NCBI RefSeq assembly: GCF_964194025.1
Contig: NC_134476.1
Span: 45,012,001-45,076,000, forward strand
Source: Convolutriloba macropyga
Taxonomy: Eukaryota
Length of the DNA: 64,000 nucleotides
Direction: 5' to 3'
Part shown: positions 10,521 through 53,973 of the stretch, piece by piece
How the letters are laid out: every line of letters starts with the position of its first letter
Position numbering within the stretch: position 1 is the stretch's first letter
Made by a program: the position numbers and the translations under genes
The notes under the pieces: model-generated
What the model was told of the DNA's origin: nothing
The model's input: the letters and a program-made list of their open reading frames with translations, nothing else
The model's database searches: none

Positions 10521-11513
10521 CTTAAGAAAATCCGACAATCACAGTTTTGCTTTCAATTTGTGCATACTACTAGCCGCGCGCTTAGTTAATGGGGTAGTAT
10601 GCACTGAAAACAACTTCAAGAAAAAAAAACAAAAAAGAGGAAAAATTAAGAACATTTTTCTCATTAGATCAAAAGCAAGAAAATCAAAAGCTCGAAATAT
10701 TTCCCCACTTAAATTTGCTCACACAAATACTTCCTTGAGGATAACTCAAACGTCTCTTCCTTTTTTGTCCGCGGTCTCAGAAGTTGCCGAAAGAAGTCCC
10801 TTTGCCCCTCTTTTTGGTCTCAGTAGTCACCAGATGGAAGGAGAGAGTATTTTTGGTGTCAGTAGTTACCATAGTAGATGATCTTCAAAACTTAGTGTCA
10901 GCAGTCACAAGGGCGGAAGGAATTCTCAAAAAAAGATTTCAAAAGTTTTGAAAAGAAAACAAGAAGCAAGCAGTTCAATTTAAGAGGAAAGAATTTCAAA
11001 CGAGCCCCCAAGTCGAGTTGTCTTGTCTGCTTGTCTGTAGCTCACGTTACCTATTCGCACCGCAATAAAAAAAAACTTTTAAACAATTTCAACACAGGTA
11101 CTAAGCAGTAGCAGCCTCTAAGCATTTTTTTGTTCCTTTTTCAAAAAAGGTTTTGTACTTGTAAAAGATTGTAACAAAAAACTATTCAAGAGCCATACAC
11201 TTATTATACTCATAAGGAAATCTTAATTTCCCCAAGTTTTAGCAATTATTTGGTCGTGTTTATTGAAATAACGAAACAAGCGCGCGCACACGTTTATTTT
11301 TTCTTTTTTTAGATAAAACTAGCTAGATTTAGCACAAAAAAAACAATAGGATTCTATTTTTCAGAAAAGTTGCGTCGTATTTTTAACAACAAAAACTGGG
11401 ACTGATTAGCCTCACAGTGTCATAAACATTGTTTTTCAATTTTGAAATTTGCGTCGCTCCGGTTTCGAAGCCGTTTTTTACCTGTTAGTACGAAAAAGAC
11501 CAACAAGAGCAAG

Positions 11514-17500: not shown

Positions 17501-18107
17501 CCTAGCTGCAGTCAAAACCACATGGAAATTTAACCCACCATACGGCCCTCATTTCGGTGGCGTGTGGGAGCGATTGATTCAGAGCGCCAAAAGGACACTC
17601 TTGATCATTCTAGGATCTAAGCGTCTCTCCTTCGACATCTTTGAGACAATAATGGTAGAAGTCGAAGCAATCCTGAATTCCAGACCCTTGACAAACGTTG
17701 CTGATCAGCCTGAAAACGAAGAACCACTCACTCCTGACCATTTCCTCATTCAACGCCCTTACGGTTCCTTGCCACCCGGAAACTTTGGAGACCAACAGCC
17801 AGCTAGTTTCAAGAACTGGAAGCACGTGCAGCAGTTGATGAACCACGTGTGGCGGCGTTTGATTAAGGAGTACCTGCCGACATTACTCAAGAGACGTAAA
17901 TGGACAGAAAACAACCAGCCTCCTCTGAAATTAGGAGATGTTGTGTGGGTACTCAAGGACTTGACGCCGAGAGGAATCTGGCCCCTTGGAAGAGTTGTGG
18001 AAACATCCCCTGGACGAGACGGTGAAGTACGAGTTGCCAAAGTAAAAACGGCTTACGGCTCGTTCGTGCGTCCTGTCGCCGGCCTCGCACGGGTTTTTTC
18101 TCCGTAG
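11514..18107 (+). pseudogene. BEL/Pao gag-pol polyprotein broken by a stop (12269) and several frameshifts
   Basis: Gag DUF1759-like KLPPLTIQNFNGNP; three Zn knuckles (CEKCRGNH..C, CSNCLSNKH..C, CQTCSGYHH..H); protease ALIDPGS; RT FGATCSP and YMDD; RNase H LHVFVDAS and PADHGTRG; integrase HHCC, YSDNGKTF, GGVWERL; C-terminal WPLGRV..PGRDG. Confidence 0.95.
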
Positions 18108-22970: not shown

Positions 22971-25731
22971 CTGCACTAGAGTGTCCCTGGCCCACAATGC
23001 TTGCCCAATTGAATAAAAATTCTTTTATACGATAGAATATGTTGATTGAAGGCTAATTGATTGCATAATATTGCAATTCTAAGGCAGTTTTTCAGTCAGT
23101 CAGATTCCTTTAAAAGACTGTCAAAAGGATCCACCGAAAATATTGCAAGAAATCAAAAAAATACATGCAACTACAATAATTGCCTCAAGGCCATTCGAGA
23201 GCCATTAATGACGATTTAATATGGTTTATTGAAATAGAGGAATCATTCCACTGCAATACAACAACACAACCTCGCTACAGAGCAACAAGTTGGTAATATT
23301 TTAATTCTGGCCTAAAGTTACCATCGAGTTTGGCAATCAATCGTTTTACTGCTCGATATATTAATCTATGCGGGTGATAGTACAAATAACCGACAGTGGT
23401 GTTAGCCGACAAGGAGACAAAAAGTAAATTAGGTGATTGCTTTAATTCTGATTTGCTGTCAAATCTCATTGGTCTAACTTGTATGTTCTAGCATAACAAT
23501 AGTACTGTTTCCTCAATGAAAAGGTCGATACTTCGAATTTGTATCGGTAAGGCAGTCATATTAACCTAGAGTATTAAATTTCTGCTTTAATATTATTCGG
23601 CTACTTGACTTGGGATAGAATTAATTAAAAAGAGAGTTAATTCAAACGACTAGACTACATTTGCTCAATTTTGATTGGCTAAAATTGTCCGATTTCTCAC
23701 GCTGATATATTTCGTAATTTTCCCTACTTTTCTTCACGCCGCTTATGTAAAATATTCTTATTTCCAATGCTTTCATGTTTCCTTTTTCAATTTAAAATAA
23801 TTGTTTTCTTTCTCGGTTCCGTACTTTAATTCCGGAGAAAAATTAACTCAAAGACTTTTTATGGACTTTAAAGCTCCCTTTTCTAGGATTGTAAAAATGT
23901 GTTTTTAGCTTTAATTTTGGCATTTTGAACTCCCACGGAACAATTTTTCAAGTTTTATTAAACGCTGTTCAAGATTTATAGCCATTTGAACTTTTCTTTT
24001 GATCGAACAGACAAGTCTATTTTAACCTCCCTTAAATCTAGATTAATATTCCTGTTATAGAGGGAAATTACTGGCGAAATATTACTTGTAGCTATGGGTT
24101 TGCTTTTATGGATTATTAATAATAACTTTCTGTTGAAGTTAGTTATATGTTCTCTTTTACTGGCCTTGTTAGCAACAGCCACGCTGGAAGGTAAATCAAA
24201 GTTCAAAGTTTAAGCCTTCAATTTAATTTTGATCAGTCTTAATCAGCAAAAAAGTTCTTATTTGAGACATGAGAAGTCGGCCAACTTCGTTTGTTTTCAG
24301 TTTTTGTAAAAAAAATTGCTTTGTTTCAGGCGAGGAGTTATTTGTGGAATGGGAAAACCCAGTACAGGTTAGACTATTCACTTTATTTATTTTTTGCTTT
24401 TAACTTTACATATATCTAATTCTGCTTCAATAAAAAAGCAATTGATAACACAGGGACAGAAGGCTGTGCAGAATCAAAACAGCAAGCTATAAAAGACAGC
24501 TGGACCTGTTCGCCAACTGTTGCCTATGTTTTGGGGTTTTGCAGCCAGTTGGCACGCCTGTCGAGACTAGAAGCCTATCTTGCAACATTTCTATCATTTT
24601 TCTTGCATAATAAGATAATAAAAATAATAAAAAATAATTTTTCTTGCATTTTTTTTGCGAGATAGGCTTCTGAGTGGTCGCGATCAGATTTACATCTGGC
24701 AGTATAAAACACAAAAACATAGGTAACGGTGGGCAAACAACTTCAACCACTTATAATTTTCGCTTAACAATATAACATAAACTCAACATAAACTTAACAT
24801 AGGTTGAAAAGTTTAATCTATTTTTGAACAGTTAAGTTGCAACAGTTAAGTTAAAGTTGTGCCGCAGTTTTGTAATATTTGTGATATTTCCCAAAGTGAA
24901 AGTTTCCAGTGTTATAATTAGTAGTAATTGATTGAAATTTTTGTTTCGTAAAAATAAAAAAACAAAATTTTTGTCTAGAGTGACAAAGCCTCGATAGTTT
25001 ATCATATGGGGTGGGACACCCTCGCAGACGTTAAATGCACAGTCTGCACGTTAGTTTTTGACCTGTTTTTTCGTGTCATTTTTCAGTACTTAGCACGAAG
25101 ACGGTATATCTAAGCATAGTATCGTACTTGGAGTTATAGTCAAGGTACTTCGTATCTCATATCGACTAAAAAAAGAATAAACCTTAACATGTTTCACTTT
25201 TTGTCTGATCATACAACTCCGCTTTGTCGCAGTTTTCGAATCATTTTTGCTAACTTTCATTTTTTTTACGATTTTTAGTCCAATAGAATGAATTCATCCA
25301 ACGCTTCAAGTGGAATTGCTTCCCACTAATTCCCACAGATTCTAATCAAGACATAATTTTTCTCCAGATGAAATCCGGTGTGAAAAGATTAGCACTGTAC
25401 CCCCAATGAACTACAAATTGGAGTAGTTGTTTACGCGAGTGAAAAAATATCAAGTTCAGATCATCACAGTTTGCACCGTTCCCCGAAGAAAAGTAGTCGC
25501 TAGCCTTTTTACTAATTTGAAATGGGGAAACCTATATGGAGGTAGTTTGAAATGTAAAATCAGATTTTTAAACTCATGTTGTTTGCTAAAAAGCTATACA
25601 CATGTAATCTTGATATAATCTGTAACATGATACACCCACTAGTGATGTGGTGTAGATTTGTGCAGGGTTACCTTTGCTAAATTATCTGCAATTATTCATA
25701 TCATGTAATTGGTGTCTTTAGCCCAATTCAG

Positions 25732-28700
25732 CTGCAGTGCAAATTTGCCCATCTGGTGGTGATTCACGTGATCAAGTAGCCACCACAGCTCCTATCCTTC
25801 TAGACAGCAGTGGAAATCTCATGTTAGTCATTGAAGCAACGCTCTTCTAGAATATTCTCAGCATGTACCATCCAATTAAGACCCTTGGAAAGTTTCCAGT
25901 TGCGGGTTGTTTTATCGAGCTTTTTTGGCATACATTGCATTCGAATCAATCCAAAGAATAACCTATTATAATGTCAAAGAGTTTATTGTTTTGTTTTCCC
26001 CAGTTTTAGACTCAGTTTCAATTCATAGGTTAATTGAAATTGCCACTATACTTTGACAATGTATGTGTGCCTGTCATTTGATCAATCGAAATGTTAAATC
26101 AATTGTTAAATCAAAAGTTATCAGTTAACATAGAGTAATTTAATCTGACTATTTGGTCAAAGTTGGACAAATAGACAGTGTGGGTTCAAAAAGGTTTGAT
26201 TACTTGGCAACTAGAGGCTGAATGTAGAAAGAGTACGGCTTGCTCGTCTTCAGCACAAAAAATGGATATGATAACATACTTTATTGTTAAAATGAACTTG
26301 ATTATAAGTAAATGACTTGAACAATTTTAGGCTTCAGTTTCATATCAGCACTAACGACCAATTTCCACCAATCAAATTCCGATACAAAGTGTACCCTCAT
26401 GATCAGGATTCATCTCTCAACTCACAACAGTCGTGCAACCCTAGTGGATCTGGGAACAACCCAATTTCGTATCAGTTCCAAGAAATAGACTGGTCAACTC
26501 AGCCTGAAAGTGGACCAAAAGCGGGACTCAATCTTGTTCTCATAAGTCTGCCTTGTGAATCCAACTTGTTTGTACTTGAAGCCACTATGCAGCCTTCCGT
26601 CCAGTCAAGTTGTGCCACTATTGATCAAGTCAAGTTCTCCCTCGCTGGAACTGTTTGCAAACCCAAAGTTGTAAGTCATCATTCCATTGCCAAAATTGTG
26701 TCCAGTATGGGCAAATAGTTTAATATATTCCCACGGAAATAAACCCCCACTTGACTTTTAACCAGCCGAGCATTTATCGCGTTTGGCCATGCCTCGCGAG
26801 CCATGGCTATGCGTTGGCGGCCCGTGGCACTTGATATGAAACTATCACAGCCGAACAAATTATCACAATCAAAGTTCATATTTATAATGGGGGTTCATTT
26901 GCGTGGGGGTTTTTTCCGTGGTTTTTTTCCTATCTATAATTATGTGGGGGTTTATTTCCTAGACCCAGTTTAAACCGGTCTTTTTCTGTTCAGTTCCCCA
27001 AGAGATTGACGTTCCTACCTCTGACATTCAGCGAAGGATTCCGTTCCGAAGAATGCATTCCAAATGCCCAAGTGGCTCAGCCTCGCAACTCATTTGATGT
27101 GGAACGAAAGCCATCTCCTAATTTCAAATACAAGTGCTTCCGCAAATTCTCTCTTCTGGGCTTCGAGTTTTATCCAGTTAAAGAACCAAGTCAGGGAACC
27201 GGGTCTGGGTCAAACCGTGGAGGTCGCGAATTGGAGCAGAACTATGGGGAATGCGTCTGTAGCGCTGGTTTTGAGAATTTCACAAATTTTGAAGGATCAT
27301 CTACATGCAGAGGTCAGTATTGCAGTACTTTCAACCAATAGTTTTTATGAAAACTTATTTTCGTTTTTGTTATAACGAGTTCTCATTCTAATTTGTTTAA
27401 GCTTGTGGACCAAACTCTTTCAAAGCATTCCCTGGATCCGCATCTTGTTCGTTTTGTCCTCCAAATTCAAGAGCCTCTGATGACAGAAAGAGCTGTGTTT
27501 GTGATCCTGGTTTCTTTCCTGAATCTTCCTCTGTGATGTCGTCGTCACGGGCGTCTGGAGGACTCGGACTGTCCTCGATGGTCATCAAGTCATGCGCCGC
27601 TGTTCCATCACCCGTTAGGTACACTTCATCGAAATCTTAAAACTGAAGGAAAAGTTTTGAGCTATAACGTCAAAACGGTGTTCAGTGCTGACTAAATGTG
27701 TTAGCAAAATTGTTTATAGTGAGGTTGTGTTTAGACAACTCAGCTCCTACGTATCAGGCAATGTTGTGTTCGTCTACTGGCGCCCTCCTGCAAACTTGAA
27801 TGAGTTGCAGACTAAGCAGACCACCTTTACCATATCAATTTTCAATTCCACCAACAATCGTCTCCTAGGCAACTATTCCACTCGGTTCCAATCGAAGCTA
27901 CTCACTGGTTTGGAAGCTAAAGAGACCTACTTGATTAAAGTGTATGCCAGTTATAGAGCTCAACTTAGTGTCCCCGAGCAAGTCACAGTTTCGACCTCAG
28001 AACCTTGTGAGTTCTACCAGTTTTCTAAGAAAATCGAGGATCTTTTCTGTTCGTGCCCCCCCCCCCCCCCCAGTACGTTATGCGCCCCCAGTTACAGAGC
28101 ACATGCAATTACACAGTAAATCCTTATGTTAAAATATGGCACGTGCTCCTGGGGGGTGCAAATAAAATGAACCCAATAAGCTGGGGGGCACAAACGGAAG
28201 AGGTCCAAAATCGACAATTCATTTTTATAGAATAATTGATGACGGTTTCTTCGGAATTTCGAATTTAAATTAATATAAGGGGATTTGAATTCAATGCTGT
28301 GAACAATTATGATTTCTGGTTATTTTTGTATCTATCTATTTGTAGAGAAGTGGTTAGTTTTATGTCGGCCTTTCTGAGGATTAAAGATGATGGAAATTTC
28401 CGTTTAGGGACGTTGAACTTCACGAAAGAGTCGGCTAAACAGAGTGGTTCAATTGTACTCAGGTGGAGTGACTACCCGGCCAGAAGTGTGAAGAACTTTG
28501 CCCACTACAACATACAAGTGCTGCCCAAACAGCTCTCCCATCCCAGCAGAAACAACCGATTCCTGCCTGTACTGGATGCAGAAGTCACCACCAATGTATT
28601 CACATTCAATGCCGACAACATCAAGCCCATTTATGGAAGTTACTGGGACGAGGAGCAAGGTACTGTTAGAGGATTGTACTTGTCAACTTGTTAGTTCTCA

Positions 28701-31700
28701 TTGTGACCATCCGAAAAGCAAATTAAACATTCTGAGCAGTAAAAACCATATAAATTCAGAGATAGCAACTGTGTTTGAGACAGTTGGTATCTTTAAAATG
28801 CCCAAAGTCTGCAGCGCTAAAAAGTTAGTTTAAATGCCAAAATTTCCTATATACATAGCCAGAAGTTGATATCCATCAATTTTCGGAATATAAAAACTTG
28901 CAAGTTGCGTTTTAAGCTGGGTCACGTGACTCTGCAGAAGTCTTTTCGAAACTCTCTAAGCATCTCGAACACCTCGATGGTTGTCAATAAAAGCCAGAAA
29001 TTATCTGTGACTTCACGCAGAGTCACGTAACATATGCACATGAGGCTTTATTACTATGGACCATGCTGATGTTTCTGTGAAGAATCAGAGGACTGCATTC
29101 ACGTATAAAATATACTTTTTGGGTGAAATACACTCCTATGATTCCCATATGATTCTTGTAGATGTTCTAACTAATTAATGCTGAAACTTGAGATAAGTGT
29201 TTGTTTTGATTATTTTTGGGAAGAGTGTGATTATGAGATAGTGGTTTTGAGTGATAATGGGTGTGGTAATAGTTACAATTGTTGTGATTGATTTATAGGG
29301 AAGTACGTGGAGTATGGTCCAATGTCAACAGAGTACTGTGTGAGAGTGGGGGTGGTCGAGACATTTTCCAGTCCATTCCATCCCCCCTCCTCTTCCAATG
29401 TGCTCTCTTCCTCATCTCTCTACACCCATTGGTCCAGCAAGTGCGAGCCAGTTCAGATTGGTTAGTCAATCTTGATCGCCATATTCGATTGCTCAAAATA
29501 GAGTCAAGAAGAAGAATTAATTTCTCTCGAGTTATATATTTACAGTGATACATATATCAGCTAGAACACAGAGAGAGGACAGATAACGGAGCACTGATGC
29601 TCACTAGATTCTGCCCCTGGAGTCAATTGTTCTAGTTAACATATAAGTTTCTAATCTGTTCATTTCGTAGAGCTGAAGCCACCTAAATAACTAAATCACG
29701 CTAATTAAAGGAGGACTTTTACTTTTTTCGGTCTCCATCTTAAAACCAGCTGTTATATTTCAAGCCAAGTCTGGGCAAGGTAAGCAATATTGCCGTATTG
29801 GGTACTTATGGAAGACTTGAGGGTTTGGGAACCTCTTCTTTGATTGAACTGCCGACAGAATTCAAAGTTAACTCATGTTTTGAATTGTATTTTCCAATAC
29901 TGCCTCCTGTTATTTATTATATATAACTGTAATTGTTGTTGTTGTGTTTGCAGGTGGGTTCGTGTTTGCCAAAGTGATCATCTGGGGGTGTGTGTTTGTG
30001 TTGTTCATTGTGGTCCTATTCCTGTGTCTGATAGTGGGGTGCTGTTTTGTCAAGTACAAGAGAAGACAGTTCGAGGCTCTCTACCCTCACAACAACTCAA
30101 ACACTGCAGCTCCTATTGACCCACGATGTAAGTCAACTTCTCTATATTCTTGTTCTTCTAAATCCTCTGCTTAATTTTCACTAAACTTCTTACAGCCTTT
30201 ATTAAACAAAAATGTTTTCAATACATAGCCATATTTCAGAAATTGATCATTCTAAATTGATCGTTTGTCTAAAATTCGTATCCGACAAAATTGAATTGTT
30301 TTTCCATTTTTACTATTCCTCAGAAACAGTAGAATGATGTAAACAAAACACCATTTTTGTCGACTTGTTACTAAAACTTAATATACCGAATGGAATCTAT
30401 AAATTGTTACAATTTAATTGTTAGTATTTGTAGAATTAAAAAATTAATTACAATTCGCTTTGTTACATTTAATCAAAGAAACTGCCAATATGTCAATAAT
30501 TTCAAATCTTTTCATTAGTTTGTGATAAACTCTTTGTGAATAAATTTCAAACGCTTTTCTATACCTCACAATTTATCGTTCATCAGAGGGATTTTGTCAG
30601 TTTTCCTCAATTTTTTCCTCTTTTTATTTTTTCGCCAGGGTGAAGTGAAGAAAGTATATGAAGTATCTTGTTCACGTACAAAGTCAACAGTGCTTTTTGT
30701 TAATCTTTATTTGCGCCTGTTTACATTTGTTTACGTCTGTTTATTCTTCAATTGACAATTTGTTTTCTCTTTAATTCCTAATGATTTTGCGGCGTCGCAA
30801 TTCTGGGCGCCTGGTAGCAATTGTTACAACACGTTTTTCCTTCTCAAGAGGATAATAATGTTCACAGCAGTATTTTTCAAGTGCTCCCATAACTCTTCAC
30901 AAATGGCTTGTTTGTCTAACTGAATGCTCAAATTAGGACTCTCTACCCAATTACAAGTCAATTTTGGGCCATTAGCAGGACAAGTGCCTGCTGTACTCTT
31001 TTGTTTGTCTTCCTATAGGCTGTTGATAATGTTTTCTTATGGTGTCATGTGATCACCATACCTTCTGTTGACGATGAAAGATAATTGCAAAAATGCTTCC
31101 TATAATTTTAACAGCCATTATTGAAATTGGAGGATATTAATTAACGTAATTCTTTGCCATCACAGCTAATTGCTTGCAATTAATATTAAACAGTTTTAAG
31201 ATGCTAAACTTTTAATTATCTCCAGTGTTAACTTGTGGTTTAGGGACACAGTGATGACAAAAAGGCTGTAGTTAACCAAAATTGGTTCGAAATAATGAGT
31301 TTGATTTGACAATGGTCAATGTGTCTGCTCTTCAACTTTAATTGCAATCTTTCATAAAATCAACTCAAATAAAAATCAGATCCAAGTCAAACAGAAGAAT
31401 TGTATGCTCCCCGTTAAGATCTTAATGGGAAAATGAGGCGGGATTAATTTGTTCACTGGGGGTGGTTTTGGGAAAATTTAGGAATAACCAGGGCTATAAA
31501 AGTCAAAATATTACAAGCTCTTTCCAATATTTACAACCTACTTTTTCAAACAATTCTAGTTGGGACAATATTGCACAATTGATTTCCAATTGAGAAAGGA
31601 AGACCAAGGAAGATCAGTTTATAGTTCAAAGGGAAAAGTTATTACAAGTTAACGACCTCTCTATTAACTGGTAGTTGATAAATTAAACATGTCATTTGCA

Positions 31701-34700
31701 TCTGTTCTCACTGATATAAATTTCAACTAACTTCTATTGATTTCTTAGGATCTTTCTCAATTAACTCACTTTGATAAAGGCAAACAACCGCTTTAATGCT
31801 TTTGAGAAAAATGGGAAAGATCTGATTTTGAATTCAATTGTTAATTAATATTCAGAAAGCCCTTGTTTATAGTACATTTTTCTGACGCTTTATGACGAAA
31901 AGCGCAATCGTGCCGTCAGCACTTGACAAAAAAGCAATTGAGTTAGGCAATAGTTGCCATTTTATTTGTTTTGGGTTGTTTGGATGTTTTTCGTCTCATG
32001 AAATTTTCTGTCTCATGAGACGTCGTCGGTAACTTTTCCATCATAGTGCTAAGAATTTTTTGGGAATTTTTTGTAGGTTACGCCTTCCCCTAGTCCTTAA
32101 TAGCCAAGACTTTTGCATTTGAGTTTTCTGAGCGCAACCGAAGTTTTAGTTAACTAATTTAAAAAAATGATAACCAGATTGAGGAAACTCTCCAAAAAGT
32201 GTTTCTGCGATTATGTCGTGCTTTGGAAATCTTTAAAACCTGTTGTTGGTTTTTACCCGCACTGAATGGAATGTGAAGAAAAAATGCACGCGAGCCCTTT
32301 AGAATTATGATGTTTTAATACTTGACGGTGGCGTTTTCATTATTGTTATAGAAAAGAAGTTGGACTAATCACTATTTTGGAGTTATGCTCACAATTTATT
32401 TGATGTCATCTAGCAACGTTTGCTTGAGACAGTCGCATTCATTTCAACTGCGAGCATTGCTAGTTAAGTGAAAGAGGAAAGAGAGCCAACTGATGAAGAG
32501 CATTTAATACAATATTTGACAAAGTGTTGTTTTCAAAAAAACAATTTGGCATATCGATGAAGCATCAATTTGTCTAACTTTCTTAAAAGTTGGGTTCTGA
32601 AACAACCCAAAAATTTTGGGTGAATTACTCGCAAACTGGCGAGCGGTTGTCTTCGACAGCAGCTAGCTTTGGTTACGGCTGGCTAGCGTAAGAGAAGGGG
32701 ACAAGGAGCAGAGAAAGGTGGTCATGAAGTGGCTTAATTGAGGGTGGGGTGGTTGGAGCGTTGGGGGTACTGCTCTAAACACCACCAGAAACCTATCCCT
32801 CCCAATATGATCATGTGTTATCAGCGCCTTCGGAGAATTGCACACTTAGAGACTAGCAAAGCTCTAAGAGAACTGCTCAGTGAACTAATGCCCTCCGGCA
32901 TTTACCTGTTTATTTTGTTTTTGAAAACAAAAATTTAAATGGTCAGGCGATATAAATCTATCAGACATAATGTCCGTAGCACAAAATGGGATAAAAAACC
33001 AGTTGAGTAATATAATTTTTACAGACTTCGTTTGTGATCAATTAATTAGTCATAAATTTTAATTTCAAACAAAACAAGTACTTTCTTGAGCATTTCTTAT
33101 TTTTGACGGGGAAAATCATCTGTTAGGAATCAAGGCTATTAGTTAAAAAAATGAAGTGAAAAATTTTACTCCGTCGTAATTGTGCACATATATAAGATTG
33201 ACTAAAAGTATGGGACTATTTATTTTGCCACAGTTTTCATATGGCGCGTAGGTTTTGTTTACTTTTCAGTGATTGTTATCTAAGTGTTGTGCTCTTTTTA
33301 GTTGCTTAGCAATTTTCAAATCATTTCATTTTGTCTGTGATGTTTGATTTTTGTCCCATATTTGACAAAAAATAGGAAGTATCGATCTTTTAAAAAATCA
33401 TTGATTAGGCAAGGGATGTTAGTGAGAATTGGATGGAAGTTGTGGATGTTCACATGATTGATAGGGTAAAGTATTGTGAATGGGCGATTAGAGATAGCAT
33501 TAGGATGTAGTCTCCCACAATATCGATTGTTGTGAAACAGAAGGAGATAGATACTATTGAACCAGCATAAAAGAACCCATGGTCCGCAAAATACGTATCC
33601 TCACCCTGTGACCACTCAAACACTGCTCATTTAGTTCAATTCCATTTAAACAGAAATTTTTAACAGCGAAAAAAAATATTTTATAAGATAAACCGAATAT
33701 ATTATAGTGAAATAAAGATTGCTTTATTCGATACTTCGTTTAAGTATTCAGAATAAGAATGCTAAGTAGAGAAATTTTTGGTTTGCTTATGAAATAGTTG
33801 TTTGTTCAACGACAGATTAATGGAAGGTGTTTTACTGAGCCAATGTTAGACCAGTTCTGGACCACAATAATTCTCTCAAGACTGCAATTTCAATTGCACT
33901 TTTAAATGGTTTTTTTTCGGACCAACTCCAATCGCGATGGCTTTTTCTCAAACATAACATGTGATACAGATGTTTTAAATGACATTTCGGTTATCTAAGC
34001 TGTCGGATTGCGTAGTGTGTTGTGTGTGGTGCAGTTGTCGTGGATTAAATGTGACTGGAGTGTCCGCAGATACACACTCCAGTCAGTGCCAGTCAACCTG
34101 AATGGCTTTTAACCCAATCCAGACCCACAATAGAGAGATAGAAGCCCATAGTGCAGTATAGTAGTATCCATAATACTAACTATTTTCACTCTATTGATTA
34201 AATACACAGGCTGCTACTGTCTTACAGATTAGAATGTGGGCAGGGTCCTTTAATAATATTATCTCTCCATTTTCCCATTCTTACCCTATCTCTCTCTCTC
34301 TCTCCATCCGTATATTTATCCTGACATACCTCGGTTCGCCCATATCATCAAATGCCTCTCCCACATTTCTCTGGAGCCCGGAGGGTTTTGTTCAAATTAA
34401 AGTTGAACTATAGCCTGAATTTGTTTTGAGGCAATGAATTGTAATCAAAATTGACACATAAATTGTTGAATAATGTTATCTTATTTTGTTGATCAATTGC
34501 ATTGGTGATTGCTCACCAATTTGAATCTATTAGAAGAAATCAAAAGATATTACTCACCAATCTAATCAACCAATCGCCTTTGGCGCACATTGAGTATGAA
34601 GCCATGTACAATATCCCTACTATCAGTTAGCAGTTAAGCTATCAGCAAAAGTAATCAGGATTCATTAATTGATCCGAATTGATTAGATCAAGATAATTGA

Positions 34701-35643
34701 TAAGCCCAAGGCTCACTTTGAATATTATACATGTTGGCCTTTTTTGTCTAGTATTGCTATACAAAAATAAATTTAATCGGAAATATGATTCTCAACGATT
34801 TTTTTTCTAGGAAGCTTTAATGAATGAAGACTTCCAGTTGCCTATTTTTTTCATGAAACGTTAAATAAAACGGGAATCACTCTTCTGCGAGAATAAACAC
34901 GTAGTTTGCCCTGTTGAGTTTTGGCGATGAAATCAGAAGCGAATTCCTTATTTAAATAATGTGTCTTTACAGATCCAGCATCTGAGTACATAGTAGCAGC
35001 TGGACACTACCCTCCCCAGTTACAATCATTCCCAACTGACAGCACCTACATTCCAGTCGGGTCTGGCACATCATACTGGAGTGCCTCCGCAGCCGGAGCA
35101 TCCCCGGACATCCTGTATCACCCGGCCACTGCCATTCTACCCGCCCGCACCCCTCTCGGAATAGACAATGACATGTACGAAGTGTTGAATCAACATAAGT
35201 ACAACATGAACATGGGACAGGGTGCTGGTGTCATCAAAGGTCAGCAGAATTTGACCCCTGACTACGTCGGAATACACCATCAGATGGAGTTGAACAATCC
35301 TAACATGAGTGATATTGATAATGACATCTACCAGATGCAGAAGGGATTTGACTGCACTGGAAACATTTTGGGAATGGTTAACTATCAGAGTGGCAAGTTG
35401 GGGTCAGAGGTCAACTTTGATGCTGATGAGAAGGAGTCAACAGTTGGGGGTGTGAACAAAGGTCAAGGCCACCAACAAAGTAAAGGTCAAAGACCTCCTT
35501 TGCCTTCCAGATGTCCTGCAACAGCAGCTGACAACATTCAAAGCGGGGGAGGAGGAAACTCTACTATTTCATCCACAAAATCCAACGGTCAGTACTCTCA
35601 TATTAATTACATCGGTACCTTATCTATGGTAACATTGAGCTGA
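25732..35643 (+). CDS. Multi-exon Eph-receptor-like type I membrane protein (divergent ligand-binding-like domain, Cys-rich region, 2 FN3, TM, Tyr-rich tail; no kinase seen). Exons: ~25732-25822, 26331-26670, 26994-27312, 27402-27618, 27735-28006, ~28351-28659, 29299-29460, 29954-30127, 34973-35643. The 5' exon(s) are unresolved.
   Basis: GT-AG introns join in phase (the 28351 acceptor is not the first AG, so it is less certain). Motifs: GECVCSAGFE...CRACGPNSFKAFPGSASCSFCPPNS...CVCDPGF (Eph Cys-rich); VYWRPP...LTGLEAKETYLIKVYA (FN3); VLRWS...YNIQV...TEYCVRV (FN3); hydrophobic helix followed by KYKRR. Confidence 0.8.
26729..26960. mobile_element. Intronic MITE-like inverted repeat
   Basis: ccacggaaataaacccccac on the left; complementary gtgggggttttttccgtgg (~26903) and gtgggggtttatttcc (~26944) on the right. 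Confidence 0.65.
28038..28206. mobile_element. 169-bp MITE with GG...CC termini and 8-bp TSD (Merlin-like or hAT-like)
   Basis: Imperfect TIR ggatcttttctgttcgtgcccccc / ggggggcacaaacggaagaggtcc; TSD aaaatcga at 28030-28037 and 28207-28214. Confidence 0.85.
28921..29031. repeat. Small intronic inverted repeat (~22-bp arms)
   Basis: gtcacgtgactctgcagaagtc versus gacttcacgcagagtcacgtaac. Confidence 0.7.
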
Positions 35644-36188: not shown

Positions 36189-39100
36189 TGAGAACAGATA
36201 GAAAACGCCCAAAATTTTACTTTATAGCTTCTGAAATGTGAGGTTAACTTGGACTGTGTTTTACTTTAGACGTCTGTGGGAATAAATTTCGAGATAACAG
36301 TTGTGTTAATGAGTTAATTTCGTACAAAGAGCTTCATATTCCTATGATTGTATGCATTCTAAACATTTTTTGATCTCACTTTTATACTAAGCTTGAAGCA
36401 AGACTTTTATGAAAAGACAGCTGTTATTACCTTTGAATTATTTGTAAAAAAGATTAAGAAAAGTTAGAAAATAATACTTGAATGAAAATGTATAAATAGT
36501 TGTGCGTCATTTGCAGTCCTCTTGAACAACTTTCTATCCTATCTTTCTCCCTTTTTCTTGTGTGTTTGCAGAGCAGAGTGTGTTTGAATGAACTTTTGTC
36601 TCCTTCTCAACAGTTGTGCCAATAGTGTCCATAATGTCCCTTTGTATCCAAATCCATTCATTTCACTCTATTCTCCGAGGAGAGAAAGGGAGAATGATAG
36701 GTTCACCAGCTCAACCTTAAGTCAACAATCCGTTGTCAATATTGATTGCTTTCTTTTAGAAACCTCAAACTAATTTTTCACATGTTTTCAGTTTCCATAT
36801 TTTGGCAATTGCGTATACTTTGTGACATAAAATATAATTCTGCTTTTAAATCATTGATCGGGGGGGGGGGGGGGGGATAGCTAGTATCTCTGGTTTCACG
36901 ATCTTACAAATTGAAAGGCTTGAAAACTGTTTTAGTTTTAAGTTTTTGCACTGGTTGATGAAATGTGTGGATTTTTGTGAAAGGAATAATTTGAATAGGC
37001 ATTGTAGTGTCTTAATATTAATGCTGAATATTTAATCCATGCATCCTCTCTTTTTCCTCTTTCTCTTAGATGTGTGAGTGTATTATAATCCTGTTTAGTA
37101 TTCCAGAGAAGTAGTCATAATGTGACGTCCTCCAGGGCGACTCTAGACCCATAAATGTCACCATAAAACTCAACTTATCCAACTCAAGGCTAGAAAAGTA
37201 AACGACGTCATAAATTTTAACCCCTCTCCAATAAAACATCAAACATCCCTACATTCCTTGCTGCAGCTCCCGCCCTCTCCGGATGTTTTTGGAGCGAAAG
37301 GGAGGAACTTTTTAACACAGTTTGCGGAAGTCACTTCAGCCGTTTATTCTAATCTATACTCATAAACTGCACGCTCATTTCGAACGTTTCAGCAAAACTC
37401 TTAAATAATTTTGTTCGCATTCGCATCTAGGACAAATATGATAATTGTTCTATCAGTCAGCTGAAGAAACTTCTCTATTCTCCGTCTCTTTCTCAATAAC
37501 CATTTCATAGCCTGTTTTTTAACGTAGTCATATTGAGAAAAAATTTTTCGCGCAAAAAATGGAGTTTGCGTTTAACAAAAAAATGGAATATTGTTTTTTT
37601 TTCATACCAAAAATGACCAACGTCAGCTGGGCTGTATTTCCCCTTAATTGCCAATTTTAATTCTACTTGACAAAACAGCAACAACAAAACAAATTTAATC
37701 GCATTTTCTGGAACATTTTGCGACAGTTTGCTCTTTTAAACGTTCAACTGTAAGTTTTGGCGCCTTGAAGAATGGCGGTTTTAGGGATTTATTCAGCGGG
37801 GAGCACACAATTTACTCAACCTGGAGGCTAGAAGTGCAGTTTACTTTGTCCTTTAGAACTCCCCAAAAAAGCCCGGCAGCCGCTGCTCATTGTGTTGTTT
37901 GCTGTGTCTTTTAATCCATACAATTTAGCAACAATAATTTGAGAGTAAAGATGGCTCCGTATTTACTAACGGATGTCGTGAAACACAAAAAATGAGCGCC
38001 GTAATTGAACAAAACCTATTCATATTTTATGAACAAATTTATATCTCTCCCTTTTCAACGAGTGCTAAGAAATCCCTCAAATTGCATTTGCAGCCCCAGT
38101 CCATAAATTATTGCAACTTTAATTGATAAAGATCTCCTCAGACTTGTATGCATTGAAAGTCTGTTGGCCAAACCCATAAACGCTTATGTTCGTTTTTGAT
38201 TCTGAGTGCCGATGTTTTGTTAGCCCACTCTCTGATAATTGATATAAATAGTAAAAAGTTGTGTTAAAAATGAGTTTGCAAAATTTGTCTTTCGTCGTAG
38301 ATTTAATGATTCAATTAGTTTAAATTTTACGACTACATCATAAAAAGTGTACACATGATGTGCATTTTTGCCCCCAAGATAGCTTGTTTTAATCTGATTT
38401 GGGTAATCTTTGAAAACGGCTATTAAGTTAACAACCCTTAATCCTAAAAATGCCTCTGTTGTTCTGAAAACCTTGCGGGGTTTTAGTCTCTAAATGTCCT
38501 TTTTCAACAAATACATTAGCTCATATTGTGGATTTTTTGGGGGATTTTGACCGAGCTGAAAAGTTTTTCATTTGATCGGGTTTTGCTGCGGTTGTTCACA
38601 TTGCAGCCTGTGTGAATCATTGGATGTGATCAGCTTAGTGTGAATTAATAATAAACCCACGTGAAGAAAAGGTGAAAAGTTAGTGAAAAGATTAGCATGG
38701 AGGGATTTGAGATCGGGTGGTTCTAATAAATATTGACAAAAGTTTAATTTAATCTTCATTCCAGCCACTTGTAAGATTGAATCGCCCCGTTATGAGCTCA
38801 AACCTAGAAGGGTGGTATTTATTATAGCCCCGACAAGTCTATTGTTTTGGTAGTGCTTTCCCCTTTCAAGATCTCTTTAACCGTTAAATATTTAGCAGAT
38901 TATCATAATCCTCCCTAATATAACACCATTACCTAAACTTCCACGGCTAGGCTCAAAAACCTTCACTTTACATGGACATACATATGGCCGATCCGTTTTC
39001 TCAATTTTGTCAAAATGTTGCCTGCCTTTTTAAAATCAAAAGGTCCTAACATTTAATCTGAGTTGAAGCATTTGAAATTTTGCATGGCTGTCTTTCACGG

Positions 39101-45914: not shown

Positions 45915-48029
45915 AACAAATTTAAAAAATGTTAAAACATCATCTGCTTCAGCAATTTAAAATGTTTTGGTTGGAATGTTTCTTGCTATAATGTTGATAG
46001 CAAGAAGCGCAGAACTGTGAGCCAGCTGCAAGCAAAAAAGCCTCCTTAATGTCTCATGACCTTTGATTATGTGGGTTTCAGTATGCCAATTGCAAACCAA
46101 ATAGCGTGGGTTCCACTATCTTAGTTGAAAACCCGATTGTGTGGGTTTTACTATTCCAAATGAAAACACGATTGATTAAACTTAATTAATTATGAGTTTT
46201 TATTTTTACCTGACTAAAGTGGGGAGAATAGAAACAAATTTCATATCTAGAAAACTGAAATGAACTGCTGAAAATTGATTTATTAAACTTGTGATCTGCT
46301 GTTTTATAAACCTTCTCATGGTAACCAAGCTAATTGTTGTTCCAATTCCCAATTTGTGTAAAAAAATTTAAAATGTTACCATTGGAAAGAAACATTAGCT
46401 ACTTCAAAAGTAATTTTTATTTTTAGCAGAAAACAGAACCCTTAATTGTGATTTAAAATTTTGTTCGAGAGCACAAAATGTATATATTATACCTGACTTG
46501 TAATTTTTAACCGACTGGTTTTAAAGTAATTTACTTGTCAATTCGGAAAAAAAGAACATATAACAAAATTGTTACGTGTGACTTATTGAAGTGACGTTTA
46601 AAAAAAGACGTTTTAAGATTGAGGAAGTTTGATCAAATTTTTGTCAAATAGGTCTTTTCATGAAATAGTTGTATATCATTGACAAATTGGAACAAACATA
46701 TTGGCACATCAAGTTATTGACTGACTGCTTACTGATGGTCAGCTGTGAAGGCTTGTTCGGAAGTAACTATCACGGCTTAGAAACTAAACTGGTTAGAAAC
46801 TAAGTTATAACCAACTAGCTTGCTTTGAGTAGTACTAGAGACTTGTAGAGTGAGAGATGGGCATATAGTGCGATAGGGTGAGAGTGAATACGGACATAAT
46901 GATGAACAGCGGGATCTCCTGACCAATTAGTGTCACTACACTGTCTCTTAGTTAGTTAGTTAGATCTACCTGTTTAGTATGTGTGCTCGTCTCTCCTTAC
47001 TCAACTCTCTCCAGTCCGCAGGAGTGACATTTGAACAAGAAGAGCTAATTGTAATTGATAGCCTGACTACTGTTATCACTATTACCACCACTACTAACTA
47101 ACTATAATCTAGATATGATTTGTAACACTGATTGACGCTTCTTTTTGTGATCAATATCGCAAAAGGAGAGAACTTTGTTGCACTTGATTCCACTGCAGTC
47201 AAAGATACTTCACTGTAGTCAGAAGAAGATACAAATAATTAACTTAACTGTACTCAGTACCCATTCCCTCTCACATACACCAATGTAGACTGTGACTGTT
47301 TGTGATTGATTGATTAGTTTAGTAGCATAATCAAGTTAACCAGTACTAGTCATAATTCTATTCAAAAACTAATGTCATTCTTCTATTTCTGCCATGAAGC
47401 AAAGCATCTGAAACATTGTCTGCTATTTTTGAATCGTAGTAACATTTGTATTTCGCACATTAATCGCCCATTTCCTAATGTCATCTCTTTCTTAAGTTAT
47501 ATGATGCAGAGCTTAAATGCTGTAGTGACTGAATGATAGTGATTGGAATGTTAATAGTGTCTAAATTTGGCCAATCAGTCCACGGGTGACCCCTGCCCCT
47601 TTTCTCTCTCCCATTTTTCTCCTTCTAATGCCAATCGGAACAGGAGAACGGGAGTAGTGGGAAAAGCACCCCTCGCTTCCTCTTTTTCTCATCGCCCCCT
47701 TTATTTTTAACTCAGTGAGCTAGCTAACGTTGTCAACTGTAATTGAAATTCTAGCCCGTAGTTATCTTAACTTTTCAGCCTCATTAACTGCGTCAATCTT
47801 GTCAATCACTCGAAATTTAACTCCTATGTGAAAATTTGATCGAAGATTAGTTTTTCCAGAAATTTGATATTTTACTGAATTCCAGTCGTCACATCAATAA
47901 CATATATTAAAACCATTGCTTATAAGATGCAATTTTTCTAGTTAGTTAACATTTGGTATAAAATATATTTGTTGCAATGAAATCAAGCAATGTTTGTTTA
48001 AGGTTCGGGCGAAATTGAAAACCCCTACA

Positions 48030-48140
48030 AGCCGTCGAATCAGAGCGCAGAGCATTTTAGCCAATCACACGCCATAATCAATACAGCCAATCAGGGTGCA
48101 GTACCGCCTCCACGATCTGTGAAGACGCCGCCATCTTTAC
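48030..48140. promoter_or_regulatory. Candidate Pol II promoter: two CCAAT boxes and a YY1-type motif
   Basis: agccaatca at 48059 and 48085; gccgccatctt at 48127; locally GC/CpG-rich. Confidence 0.4.
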
Positions 48141-50159
48141 TTAGCAGAGCAGGCAACAAGCCTAACTTCTCCCCACACAAATCTCAGAGCATTTATGAAG
48201 ATTTGGAAACTTCTAAAAACTCTTCAATTTACATTTCAAACGATACTAGGTCCAAAATGTGCTAGAAATTAATGCGATGCATAGCTTAAGCTGTCAAAAC
48301 TTTTGGACCTAATTGGTTAGTGCTGCAGACACACTAACTTAATACTTGATAAAAGACTTGATACAACCATTCCGTCATTTATAGTATTTTTGCAGATGAA
48401 AATTAAGTACCAAGTTTTTAGATTTGTTGACAGCAGAATCGATACATTTTGTAGGCATTTGTTTTAATTTGAGATTTTGATTGCTGTACTATTGCAGATT
48501 TGAGTGAGCATGTGTTGAATAAAACAGCCTTTACAAACAAATTTCTTGTACAAGTGAACAAGACATCTCTGATACTCTGCAGGGAGCAGAAATTCGAACA
48601 CACCTGCTGATGCTGACGTAGAGCAAATGGGAGGAATGAGTATATTGTTTTTGAATTGAAACCACAAATAAAATAGATCATTACAAAAAGCAATAGATTG
48701 TTATCTGTCAAGCAGTCTGGTCAGGTTCTGTGAGTAGCACAGAAAGGTCTAACATTATTTTTGGTGGACGTAAAAGTCATCAGTATTTAAATATTGAAAC
48801 AAACAAGACTGCTCACGAAATTCTGTGCATAACTCCGAAATTTTCGGCATTGTCAACCTGTGCTCAAAACAAAGGAACTATAGAAGGGAAAATTCAGAAA
48901 CAAGTGAGCAACTGTCATTCATACAATCTCAATTCATGATATTGGAATTTTTGAGCAGAAATTTTAAATTCACTCTTCAAAATCTTGCTTTTGTGAAGAC
49001 GATGAAAAGTTCCGGAATCCAGATTTTGCTTTTAAAAACGGTCTGCTCAATATCATTGGGACAATAAATTTTTATATCAAAATTGAAACCCGAAAGTTGA
49101 AAATGTCTAAATACTATCATCTCCAGAAATTAATTTTCAAGATAGAGTAGATACAAGTATTGTAATAAATTTAAAACATGAAAAACCTAATAAACCTTGA
49201 TTTTTAAATCAGAAACTTTTATTTCAAGAAATAAAACGTCTTTTAATGTTGTTCTTTCGAAAATGAATACAAAAAAGTTTCACAAAAGGCAAAAGTGTTT
49301 CTGTATAGTTGAGAAAATTTGAAGCCATAAACATCCGTACTTTGTAAGCCCGTTTTTTGAAGGTCTCTAATCATCTACATCAAAAGCCAGAGAAGTAAGC
49401 AAAAGACTGTGAAATAAAAATTCCTGTATGAAAGTGTTAGCCAGAACGAATTAGCAAAAACTTGCCTTGACCTGGCGAGAATTAGCAAGAAGATTTTATT
49501 TCATCAAACATTTTTTCCTTGTTTTCTTTTTGTTCAAAAACCAGTCCAGTGCTATCAAAACAATAAAAATTAGTATTAATAATATTCGGAAGAATCAACC
49601 AGATCCACTTTTTTCTGTAAAATCAAAAGAACCGAAAACACAATTTGACCAAAATTGTTAAAAAAAATCAACTTACAATTCTTAAAACTAATAAAAAAAA
49701 TATGACTCATGTCAATAGCTAGCGTGTTATTACACAGCTAAACCAATGTTTGCTTTTCAGCTGATAACGATCCAACAAATCGACTTAGAAGTGGCCAGAA
49801 CAAATGAAAAATGATTACAGCTTTTGTTTTCCGAGAAACGTTATCTGTCCTTAGAGAAACTCTCTCTGTAGAAAAACAATTCTTAAACTAATAAGAACCA
49901 ATAAAAATTTTTCAGAAATTTTTATATAAGTAATTTGGAAACCATATTGCCAAAAACCAGGAAAAAAAACCGAATAAGCCAGCACCAATTTTTTTTTTCA
50001 ATTCTTCCTTTCCTTTTCTGAATAATTGACATGAGAATTTAGGTCTTCATCGCAGCAATAGAGCAAAAATTCTAAGTTTTTGTTTCTGCTGTAGTGTTTC
50101 GACTTGTGCTTGAAAGCAACTCTGAATTGTCTTCAATTGGAAGAATATGCCATACTTAA

Positions 50160-53847: not shown

Positions 53848-53943
53848 CACGAAATGAGCAGTTAGCAAACAGTCGCTTTCTTTTACACTGCATTACACGA
53901 AATGAGCAGTTAGCAAACAGTCGCTTTCTTTTACACTGCATTA
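53848..53943. repeat. 48-bp perfect tandem duplication in the LINE 5' UTR
   Basis: Unit cacgaaatgagcagttagc...acactgcatta at 53848 and 53896. Confidence 0.95.
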
Positions 53944-53973
53944 CGTAATAAAATTTCAACTGCATTCTTAACT

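What the first reader, a model, noticed from the sequence alone, without database searches (positions are those of the whole stretch)
25732..35643. Apparently kinase-less, divergent Eph-like receptor
Seen: the exon chain gives an Eph-type ectodomain order (ligand-binding-like domain, Cys-rich region, two FN3), a TM helix, a juxtamembrane PIDPRY reminiscent of Eph YIDPxxY, then about 220 aa of low-complexity tail to a stop. No GxGxxG, HRD, DFG or SAM-like sequence appears in any later plus-strand ORF of the track. Known: canonical Ephs have kinase and SAM domains, and even catalytically dead EphB6/EphA10 keep the kinase fold. Inference: a decoy, co-receptor or adaptor-type Eph derivative with a replaced cytoplasmic domain.
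Basis: partly seen in the sequence, partly recalled or inferred. Interest (0 to 1): 0.7.

Follow-up and report, generated by a model that had tools for sequence, protein, structure and literature searches.

The report
Kinase-less Eph-like receptor of acoel worms
This acoel worm gene encodes a membrane receptor whose outer part is built like an Eph cell-contact receptor, but whose inner part is a conserved, tyrosine-rich tail instead of the usual kinase enzyme; a second acoel genus has the same gene, so it is real.

Summary
The exon chain is real. It is the RefSeq gene LOC142345799 of Convolutriloba macropyga (XP_075254277.1, 949 aa, "uncharacterized"), with 12 coding exons at window 24094-48265. 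An ortholog exists in Symsagittifera roscoffensis (XP_063711966.1, 981 aa, 51% identical) with the same layout.

Two 5' exons lie upstream. The exon at 34973 does not end at the stop at 35641-43. It splices at 35587 into a last exon at 48003-48265.

Layout: signal peptide, a ~150-aa beta-rich N-terminal domain, a Cys-rich region, two FN3-like domains, a transmembrane helix and a 317-aa tail.

The Cys-rich/EGF-like part matches Eph receptors specifically (PDB profile search: the top 11 hits are all Ephs, EphB2 E 3.9e-8). The N-terminal domain has no detectable sequence similarity to the Eph ligand-binding domain. Low-confidence models show only a generic beta-sandwich.

No kinase or SAM domain appears in either ortholog, the introns or the flanks. 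The tail keeps 13 of 16 tyrosines, three YxxΦ motifs (one of ITIM type, SIYEDL) and a PxxPxR motif. The TM/juxtamembrane segment is the best-conserved part (87%).

Verdict: a lineage-restricted, kinase-less, Eph-ectodomain-like receptor. It is probably a non-catalytic docking or co-receptor. It is not a bona fide Eph by the usual definition. The scan had earlier noted a kinase-dead Eph family elsewhere in this genome.

The parts
24094..24190 (+). Coding exon 1: start codon and signal peptide (aa 1-32), donor phase 1
   Evidence: Predicted independently as the best signal-peptide exon. Matches P0005 aa 1-32 exactly.
24330..24367 (+). Coding exon 2, 38 nt (aa 33-45, GEELFVEWENPVQ)
   Evidence: Exact match to P0005 with AG/GT sites. 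The W-E core is conserved in the ortholog.
25722..25822 (+). Coding exon 3 (aa 46-79): start of the N-terminal beta-rich domain
   Evidence: 45-48% identical to the S. roscoffensis exon.
26331..26670 (+).
   Evidence: The only relative among 1.84 billion representatives is the S. roscoffensis exon P0002 (E 3.6e-17). No Ephrin_lbd hit. Predicted all-beta.
26994..27312 (+). Coding exon 5 (aa 193-299): Cys-rich region (sushi-like part and start of the EGF-like module)
   Evidence: Its C-terminal GECVCSAGFE...TCR aligns to EphB2 233-253 in the profile search.
27402..27618 (+). Coding exon 6 (aa 299-371): Eph-type EGF-like module and linker
   Evidence: PDB hits are almost only Ephs (EphB2/EphA4 E 0.003 for the single sequence, 1e-4 for the 2-sequence profile). 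Pfam Ephrin_rec_like scores 18.5 bits, below the 23.1 cut-off.
27735..28006 (+). Coding exon 7 (aa 371-462): FN3 domain 1
28408..28659 (+). Coding exon 8 (aa 462-546): first part of the FN3-like domain 2
   Evidence: 59% identical to the ortholog, where the homologous sequence is split by an extra intron. No Pfam hit, so the FN3 assignment rests on position and pattern only.
29299..29460 (+). Coding exon 9 (aa 546-600): end of FN3-like domain 2 and stalk
   Evidence: 64% identical to the ortholog.
29954..30127 (+). Coding exon 10 (aa 600-658): transmembrane helix, juxtamembrane CC and KYKRRQFEALYPH
   Evidence: About 26-32 hydrophobic residues followed by a basic stop-transfer sequence (direct reading). 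It is the most conserved part: 87% aa and 81% nt identity.
34973..35587 (+). Coding exon 11 (aa 658-863): cytoplasmic tail part 1 (SEYIVA, TYIPVG, LYHPA, DNDMYEVLNQHKYNM, DIYQM, NYQSGK, RPPLPSRCP)
   Evidence: The donor G|GTCAGT at 35587 is conserved in phase with S. roscoffensis G|GTTAGT. No Pfam family matches.
48003..48265 (+). Coding exon 12 (aa 863-949): cytoplasmic tail part 2 with the conserved SIYEDL(E/D)TSK, and the stop TAG at 48263-65
   Evidence: The orthologous last exon lies 10.9 kb after exon 11 in S. roscoffensis.
38718..38944 (.). Conserved non-coding block inside the last intron. It is the only intronic sequence alignable between the two genera and contains an AATAAA.
   Evidence: 68% identity over 241 nt (E 2e-10), with a 42-nt core at 90% identity. 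It lies 3.1 kb (here) and 3.5 kb (S. roscoffensis) after the exon 11 donor. It has stops in all frames and no Rfam family match.

Best explanation
This is a real, expressed-type gene (RefSeq LOC142345799) for a type I single-pass membrane protein found so far only in convolutid acoels (Convolutriloba and Symsagittifera).

Shown:
- The ectodomain follows the Eph ground plan: a beta-sandwich N-terminal domain, an Eph-type Cys-rich/EGF-like module, then two FN3-type domains.
- The cytoplasmic part has no kinase, SAM or PDZ-binding end.
- In their place is a 317-aa, hydrophobic-poor, indel-rich tail. It carries conserved islands: 13 conserved tyrosines, three YxxΦ motifs (YIPV, YEVL, YEDL; the last in an ITIM-type SIYEDL context) and one class II SH3 motif, PPLPxR.

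Inferred:
- It descends from an Eph-like ancestor and works as a non-catalytic cell-contact receptor or co-receptor.
- Ectodomain engagement or clustering exposes the tail to cytoplasmic or partner-receptor tyrosine kinases.
- The phosphorylated YxxΦ/ITIM-type sites and the PxxPxR site then recruit SH2/SH3 proteins. Unphosphorylated, they may recruit AP-2 for endocytosis.
- The unusually conserved TM/juxtamembrane segment (87% identity, with a conserved CC pair that could be palmitoylated) mediates lateral association with a partner.
For: Gene reality and structure:
- All 12 exons match XP_075254277.1 exactly, with canonical splice sites.
- The ortholog XP_063711966.1 is 51% identical and has the same exon order.
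- Exons are depleted of haplotype differences: 4 observed against 22 expected, p 3e-5.

Eph-type module:
- The full-length 2-sequence profile search against PDB returns Ephs as all of its top 11 hits (EphB2 3.9e-8, EphA4 2e-6, EphA2, EphB6), with all 8 Cys aligned.
- The single exon alone already gives Ephs.
- Foldseek's top 17 hits are Eph ectodomains, aligned along the whole model (E 2e-9 to 1e-4). The first non-Eph hit is at 1.5e-4.
- Pfam fn3 scores above its cut-off in the ortholog.

No kinase:
- No catalytic motifs in the six frames.
- No Pkinase or SAM hit in either full-length protein at E<=1.
- No kinase chain among the PDB hits.
- No conserved coding block in the big introns or in 10 kb downstream of the ortholog.
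- The 10 longest intronic/downstream ORFs have no family above cut-off.

Tail:
- 20% hydrophobic residues and 60 gap columns, but 13 of 16 tyrosines and the motifs are conserved.
- The TM/juxtamembrane segment is 87% identical, against 44-66% for the other regions.
Against: - There are no RNA data. The four public runs that hold the locus are DNA, so exon use rests on RefSeq models plus conservation.
- The N-terminal domain is not demonstrably an Eph LBD.
- Pfam Ephrin_rec_like stays below its gathering score (18.5 and 20.9 against 23.1 bits).
- Within the species, exon 11 shows near-neutral variation (4 differences, 2 of them amino-acid changes), so constraint on the tail is patchy.
- The tail motifs are short and would occur fairly often by chance. 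Their function is entirely inferred, and no ligand or partner is known.
- Only two species are known. The homology searches were limited by caps and by fragment representatives, so 'lineage-restricted' is provisional.
Confidence: 0.6

Rival explanations
1. Pure decoy or dominant-negative. The protein only sequesters ligand or mixes into clusters of the worm's other Eph-like receptors and damps them, as the kinase-less splice form EphA7-T1 does. On this view the tail has no signalling role.
For: There is no catalytic domain. EphA7-T1 is a known precedent: it lacks the kinase, binds full-length EphA7 and lowers its phosphorylation (PMC7717530). The tail shows near-neutral polymorphism within the species.
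Against: EphA7-T1 has only an 11-aa unique end. Here, 317 aa of tail with 13 conserved tyrosines, conserved YxxΦ and PxxPxR motifs and a conserved separate last exon are kept across two genera. That is hard to explain for a functionless tail.
Confidence: 0.15
2. Not an Eph derivative. It is an acoel orphan receptor that combines a generic jelly-roll domain, an Ephrin_rec_like/EGF-type Cys module (also found in non-Eph proteins such as ELAPOR1) and FN3 domains by domain shuffling or convergence.
For: There is no Ephrin_lbd signal by any sequence method. The N-domain fold matches GOLD and CBM domains as well as it matches the Eph LBD. Ephrin_rec_like is below threshold. The TM/juxtamembrane segment has no EphA2_TM hit, and the YIDPxxY-like motif is not conserved.
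Against: The sequence match of the Cys module goes to Ephs only. ELAPOR1 chains are in PDB but are absent from the sequence hits and are 5-6 orders of magnitude weaker in Foldseek. The order jelly-roll, Cys-rich, FN3, FN3, TM is exactly the Eph order (PMC10084454). Eph LBDs give the longest N-domain alignments (116-122 residues, 12-16% identity), against 93-95 residues at 2-9% identity for GOLD.
Confidence: 0.2
3. A full Eph receptor whose kinase exons were missed. They would be alternative 3' exons far away, or too degenerate to see.
For: An earlier scan note (s1-247104) says the kinase domains of this worm's Eph-like genes have lost all catalytic motifs, so motif searches alone are weak. No RNA data were available.
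Against: Two independent RefSeq models end in the same conserved non-kinase exon with a stop. Profile searches (Pfam, PDB) do not depend on catalytic motifs, and they find no kinase fold in the tail or in intronic ORFs. Nothing else in the introns or in 10 kb downstream is conserved as coding sequence. A minus-strand TRIM-like gene and a LINE follow downstream.
Confidence: 0.04

Closest known systems
Eph receptor tyrosine kinases (EphA/EphB; invertebrate Eph, VAB-1)
   Same: Type I single-pass receptor with the same ectodomain order: N-terminal beta-sandwich, Cys-rich region with an EGF-like module, then two FN3 domains. The EGF-like module aligns significantly and specifically to EphB2, EphA4, EphA2 and EphB6, with all cysteines in register.
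   Different: No kinase domain, SAM domain, PDZ-binding end or conserved juxtamembrane YxxPxxY. The N-terminal domain is about 150 aa (against about 175) and has no detectable Ephrin_lbd sequence signal. The tail is new. By the working definition of Krishnan et al. 2019 (LBD plus kinase required; PMC6485061) it is not a bona fide Eph.
Kinase-dead Ephs (EphA10, mammalian EphB6)
   Same: Eph-type ectodomain without catalytic activity. These are thought to signal through partners that phosphorylate them in trans (PMC6993872).
   Different: EphA10 and EphB6 keep the whole pseudokinase fold and the SAM domain. Here the fold is absent altogether. Arcas et al. trace kinase-dead Ephs only to jawed vertebrates.
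Kinase-less Eph splice isoforms (e.g. EphA7-T1)
   Same: Eph ectodomain plus TM helix without a kinase (PMC7717530).
   Different: Those are alternative transcripts of a kinase-bearing gene and have a very short unique end (11 aa). This is a separate gene with a long, conserved, motif-bearing tail and no kinase exons at the locus.
Non-catalytic tyrosine-phosphorylated receptors (ITIM/ITAM-type receptors; ephrin-B cytoplasmic tail)
   Same: Single-pass receptors whose disordered tails carry conserved tyrosines in YxxΦ or (S/I/V/L)xYxx(I/V/L) contexts and rely on kinases acting in trans. Here SIYEDL, YEVL/YEAL and YIPV/YMPV are conserved.
   Different: The resemblance is functional only, with no sequence homology. 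Those ectodomains are Ig or cupredoxin-like, not Eph-like. Phosphorylation of this tail is untested.

Membership tests
Eph receptor family | [quoted passage not shown] | tested here: inconclusive
Eph receptor family | Cys-rich region with an Eph-type EGF-like module directly before the FN3 domains | tested here: met
   PDB profile search: the top 11 hits are all Ephs (EphB2 E 3.9e-8), and the aligned stretch has 8 Cys in register. The exon alone gives E 1e-4 to 3e-3. Pfam Ephrin_rec_like scores 18.5 and 20.9 bits, below the 23.1 cut-off. The sushi-like part has no match of its own.
Eph receptor family | Two fibronectin type III domains | tested here: inconclusive
Eph receptor family | Single transmembrane helix (type I) | tested here: met
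   Direct reading shows a signal peptide and one hydrophobic stretch (aa ~602-632) followed by KYKRRQ. Conserved N-glycosylation sequons lie only on the N-terminal side. There is no Pfam EphA2_TM hit.
Eph receptor family | Cytoplasmic protein tyrosine kinase (or pseudokinase) domain | tested here: not met
   No Pkinase or PK_Tyr hit at E<=1 in either ortholog. No kinase chain in the PDB search. No motifs in six frames. No conserved coding blocks or kinase-like ORFs in the introns or flanks.
Eph receptor family | Juxtamembrane YxxPxxY, SAM domain and C-terminal PDZ-binding motif | tested here: not met
   PIDPRY is not conserved (the ortholog has HQASAY). There is no SAM hit. The C-termini are ...SKMC and ...SQDT, differ between the species and are not PDZ class I/II motifs.
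ITIM-type / non-catalytic phosphotyrosine docking receptors (functional class, not a homology family) | Conserved (S/I/V/L)xYxx(I/V/L) or YxxΦ motifs in a disordered tail that are phosphorylated in trans | tested here: inconclusive
   The motifs are present and conserved at the same alignment columns: SIYEDL, YEVL/YEAL, YIPV/YMPV, plus PPLPxR. Phosphorylation and binding cannot be tested with these tools.

The most novel reading that the evidence does not exclude
Acoels may have turned part of the Eph system into a non-catalytic system. On this reading the gene is a true Eph descendant that swapped its kinase and SAM domains for a phosphotyrosine/SH3 docking tail, an 'immune-receptor-style' Eph. 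Together with the kinase-dead Eph-like genes noted elsewhere in this genome, it would mean that Eph-type contact signalling in these worms runs without any catalytically active Eph receptor.
Probability: 0.2. Interest if true: 0.75.

Novelty: new variant of a known kind. Interest (0 to 1): 0.5.

Why it matters
Published surveys report that Eph receptors keep an active kinase from sponges to humans. They place kinase-dead Ephs only in jawed vertebrates and kinase-less forms only as splice variants (PMC6993872).

A separate gene that is conserved across genera, keeps an Eph-type ectodomain and replaces the whole catalytic part with a conserved tyrosine-motif tail would be a natural experiment. 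It would show which Eph functions need the kinase at all, and how receptor ectodomains are re-used with new signalling tails. It would also bear on how cell-contact signalling is wired in Xenacoelomorpha, an early-branching and little-studied bilaterian group.

The practical value is modest until the N-terminal domain and its ligand are identified.

Tried and rejected
- Exhaustive phmmer search of the 'LBD' exon: one relative only, an exon-sized ORF of S. roscoffensis, plus two low-complexity hits I dismissed.
- Word-based homology searches with the tail, the LBD-exon profile and the EGF-exon profile found nothing new. They are limited by the length window and by exon-sized queries.
- RNA evidence: no RNA run holds the locus. 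The four runs laid are DNA contigs with no splice joints.
- AF2 of the LBD exon alone and of aa 33-461, each with a 2-sequence alignment, gave pLDDT 41-42. I used the fold searches only as weak evidence.
- A 42-nt candidate micro-exon (29224-29265, FN3 F-strand-like): rejected. It needs a 33-nt intron, is absent from RefSeq and is not conserved.
- A Grb2-type YxN motif at KYNM: rejected by regex, because the N is at +1.
- The lysine near the TM helix as a DAP12-type pairing residue: rejected. It lies at the outer boundary of the helix, not inside it.
- The conserved block at 38.7 kb read as a coding exon: rejected (stops, indels that are not multiples of 3).
The full-length searches used the stored RefSeq proteins P0005 and P0009 returned. 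Coordinates were checked exon by exon.
Full report
**What is there.** The window is AT-rich eukaryotic DNA with introns. Earlier notes of this scan name the genome as the acoel Convolutriloba macropyga, and RefSeq names later confirmed that. No RNA evidence could be obtained. The only public runs that hold the locus are DNA, with continuous contigs across the introns and no splice joints.

**Finding the annotated gene and its ortholog.**
- A search with the tail exon found one exon-sized ORF on a second haplotype (P0001).
- An exhaustive phmmer search with the 'LBD-like' exon found a single relative, P0002 (46% identity, E 3.6e-17).
- The contig holding P0002 carries the whole exon series in the same order.
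- Looking up the 90% clusters of these fragments returned two full-length RefSeq models. P0005 is XP_075254277.1, 949 aa, 'uncharacterized protein LOC142345799 [Convolutriloba macropyga]'. P0009 is XP_063711966.1, 981 aa, LOC134840182 of Symsagittifera roscoffensis.
- P0005 maps exactly onto the window as 12 exons: 24094-24190, 24330-24367, 25722-25822, 26331-26670, 26994-27312, 27402-27618, 27735-28006, 28408-28659, 29299-29460, 29954-30127, 34973-35587 and 48003-48265.
- All 12 exons have AG/GT sites and sum to 2850 nt, which is (949+1) x 3. I checked this exon by exon without joining them.
- I did not build or search a self-joined spliced model. Full-length searches used the stored proteins.

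**Corrections to the observation.**
- The long tail exon is not terminal. Protein similarity between the two species stops exactly at a GT in the same phase: G|GTCAGT at 35587 here and G|GTTAGT in S. roscoffensis.
- Both RefSeq models splice from there into a conserved last exon, 12.4 kb downstream here and 10.9 kb in S. roscoffensis.
- PIDPR|Y exists, but the ortholog reads ...HQASA|Y. Only the tyrosine is conserved, so the likeness to the Eph YIDPxxY motif is coincidental.

**Is it a functional gene?**
- The two orthologs are 51% identical over 12 exons, with open reading frames and conserved splice sites. S. roscoffensis has one extra intron.
- No intronic DNA aligns between the species apart from one block described below.
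- A second C. macropyga haplotype (99.1% identical) has 4 substitutions in 2452 exonic bp, against 88 in 9903 non-coding bp (22 expected; Fisher p 3e-5, Poisson 4e-6).
- All four exonic differences lie in tail exon 11, and two of them change amino acids. The ectodomain and TM helix are therefore under strong constraint, and the tail under patchier constraint.

**Ectodomain.**
- Canonical Ephs are built as LBD, sushi, EGF, FN3, FN3, TM, kinase, SAM and a PDZ-binding motif (PMC10084454).
- The EGF-like exon alone hits EphB2 and EphA4 in PDB at E about 0.003. A 2-sequence profile of it gives 10 Ephs among 11 hits.
- The full-length profile gives Ephs as all of its top 11 hits (EphB2 3.9e-8, EphA4 2e-6, EphA2 4e-6 to 1e-4, EphB6 0.009). 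A 63-73-residue stretch aligns with every cysteine in register.
- ELAPOR1, another Ephrin_rec_like protein present in PDB, is not hit by sequence.
- Pfam sees Ephrin_rec_like just below its cut-off (18.5 and 20.9 against 23.1 bits). It sees fn3 above its cut-off in the ortholog (27.6-29.5 bits).
- The N-terminal ~150 residues have no sequence match to any Eph LBD by any method.
- AF2 with only two sequences gave poor models (pLDDT 41.7 and 40.5).
- Taken with that caveat, Foldseek ranks Eph ectodomains as the top 17 hits (E 2e-9 to 1e-4, aligned along the whole model). The first non-Eph hit, RPTPmu MAM-Ig-FN3, is at 1.5e-4.
- The fold is therefore a beta-sandwich compatible with an Eph LBD, but it is not diagnostic of one.

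**Cytoplasmic part.**
- There is no kinase, pseudokinase or SAM signal in either ortholog (Pfam at E<=1; PDB).
- No catalytic motifs occur in any frame of the 64 kb.
- No conserved coding blocks occur in the 4.8-kb and 12.4-kb introns, or in 10 kb beyond exon 11 of the ortholog.
- The ten longest plus-strand ORFs of the last intron and flank show nothing.
- The tail is 317 aa with 20% hydrophobic residues. Its alignment has 60 gap columns, but with conserved islands.
- 13 of 16 tyrosines are conserved. So are YIPV/YMPV, DND(M/I)YE(V/A)L, SIYEDL (ITIM-type context) and PPLPxR (class II SH3 motif).
- The TM/juxtamembrane segment is the best-conserved part of the protein (39 of 45 residues, 87%, against 44-66% elsewhere). 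It includes a juxtamembrane CC pair.

**Interpretation.**
- Shown: a conserved, selected, kinase-less type I receptor with an Eph-type Cys-rich/FN3 ectodomain plan.
- Inferred: descent from an Eph-like ancestor, and a non-catalytic docking or co-receptor mode. In that mode the tail tyrosines are phosphorylated in trans and recruit SH2/SH3 proteins (or AP-2), and the TM segment binds a partner.
- Rivals: a pure decoy like EphA7-T1 (PMC7717530), an unrelated orphan assembled from similar modules, or missed kinase exons. Each is weighed in its own section.
- By the working definition that requires both an LBD and a kinase (PMC6485061), this is not a bona fide Eph.
- The literature places kinase-dead Ephs only in jawed vertebrates and kinase-less forms only as splice variants (PMC6993872). 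I found no paper on Ephs in acoels.
I could not test that note or compare sequences with it.

**Limits.**
- Only two species are known.
- The homology searches were capped. The clustered databases hide full-length proteins behind fragment representatives, so the absence of further relatives is weak evidence.
- Transcript structure rests on Gnomon models plus conservation.

Noticed in passing
window 38718-38944 (S. roscoffensis: L003 14284-14502, L007 16334-16552): This is the only non-coding sequence alignable between the two acoel genera at this locus. It is a ~230-nt block (68% identity, with a 42-nt core at 90%) inside the last intron, 3.1-3.5 kb after the exon 11 donor. It contains an AATAAA and has no Rfam match. 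It could be an intronic enhancer. It could also be a conserved intronic poly(A) site giving a short isoform that lacks the SIYEDL exon; read-through of the donor meets a stop at once in S. roscoffensis and after 17 codons here.
   Followed up: partly
window 11400-18100 (+), with the array at 8680-10520: A Pao/BEL-type LTR retrotransposon with long gag-pol ORFs (Pfam Peptidase_A17, RVT_1).
   Followed up: partly
window 53914-57727 (+) and 242-1139 (-): A LINE with an apurinic-endonuclease domain plus reverse transcriptase (Exo_endo_phos, RVT_1), largely open. A second, fragmentary copy lies on the minus strand at the window start.
   Followed up: partly
window 58609-59166 (-) and 62703-63149 (-): A TRIM-like gene on the minus strand downstream of the receptor: a RING finger exon (zf-C3HC4, E 4e-8) and a weak B-box/coiled-coil exon. 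It bounds the receptor gene on its 3' side.
   Followed up: partly
L002 1-4219 (S. roscoffensis contig ctg21988l, upstream of the ortholog): Two long ORFs (870 and 602 aa). The first has a precomputed Pfam hit to Monjiviricetes_fusion, so it looks like an endogenous negative-strand RNA virus glycoprotein-like insertion.
   Followed up: no
window 29224-29265 (+): A 42-nt in-frame piece (CDYEIVVLSDNGC) resembles an FN3 F-strand and has AG/GT borders. It would need a 33-nt intron, is not in the RefSeq model and is not conserved. It is probably a relic or chance.
   Followed up: yes
window 29954-30127 (+): The transmembrane/juxtamembrane exon is far more conserved (87% aa, 81% nt) than any extracellular domain of the same protein. 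That is unusual for a single-pass receptor and points to a partner within the membrane.
   Followed up: partly
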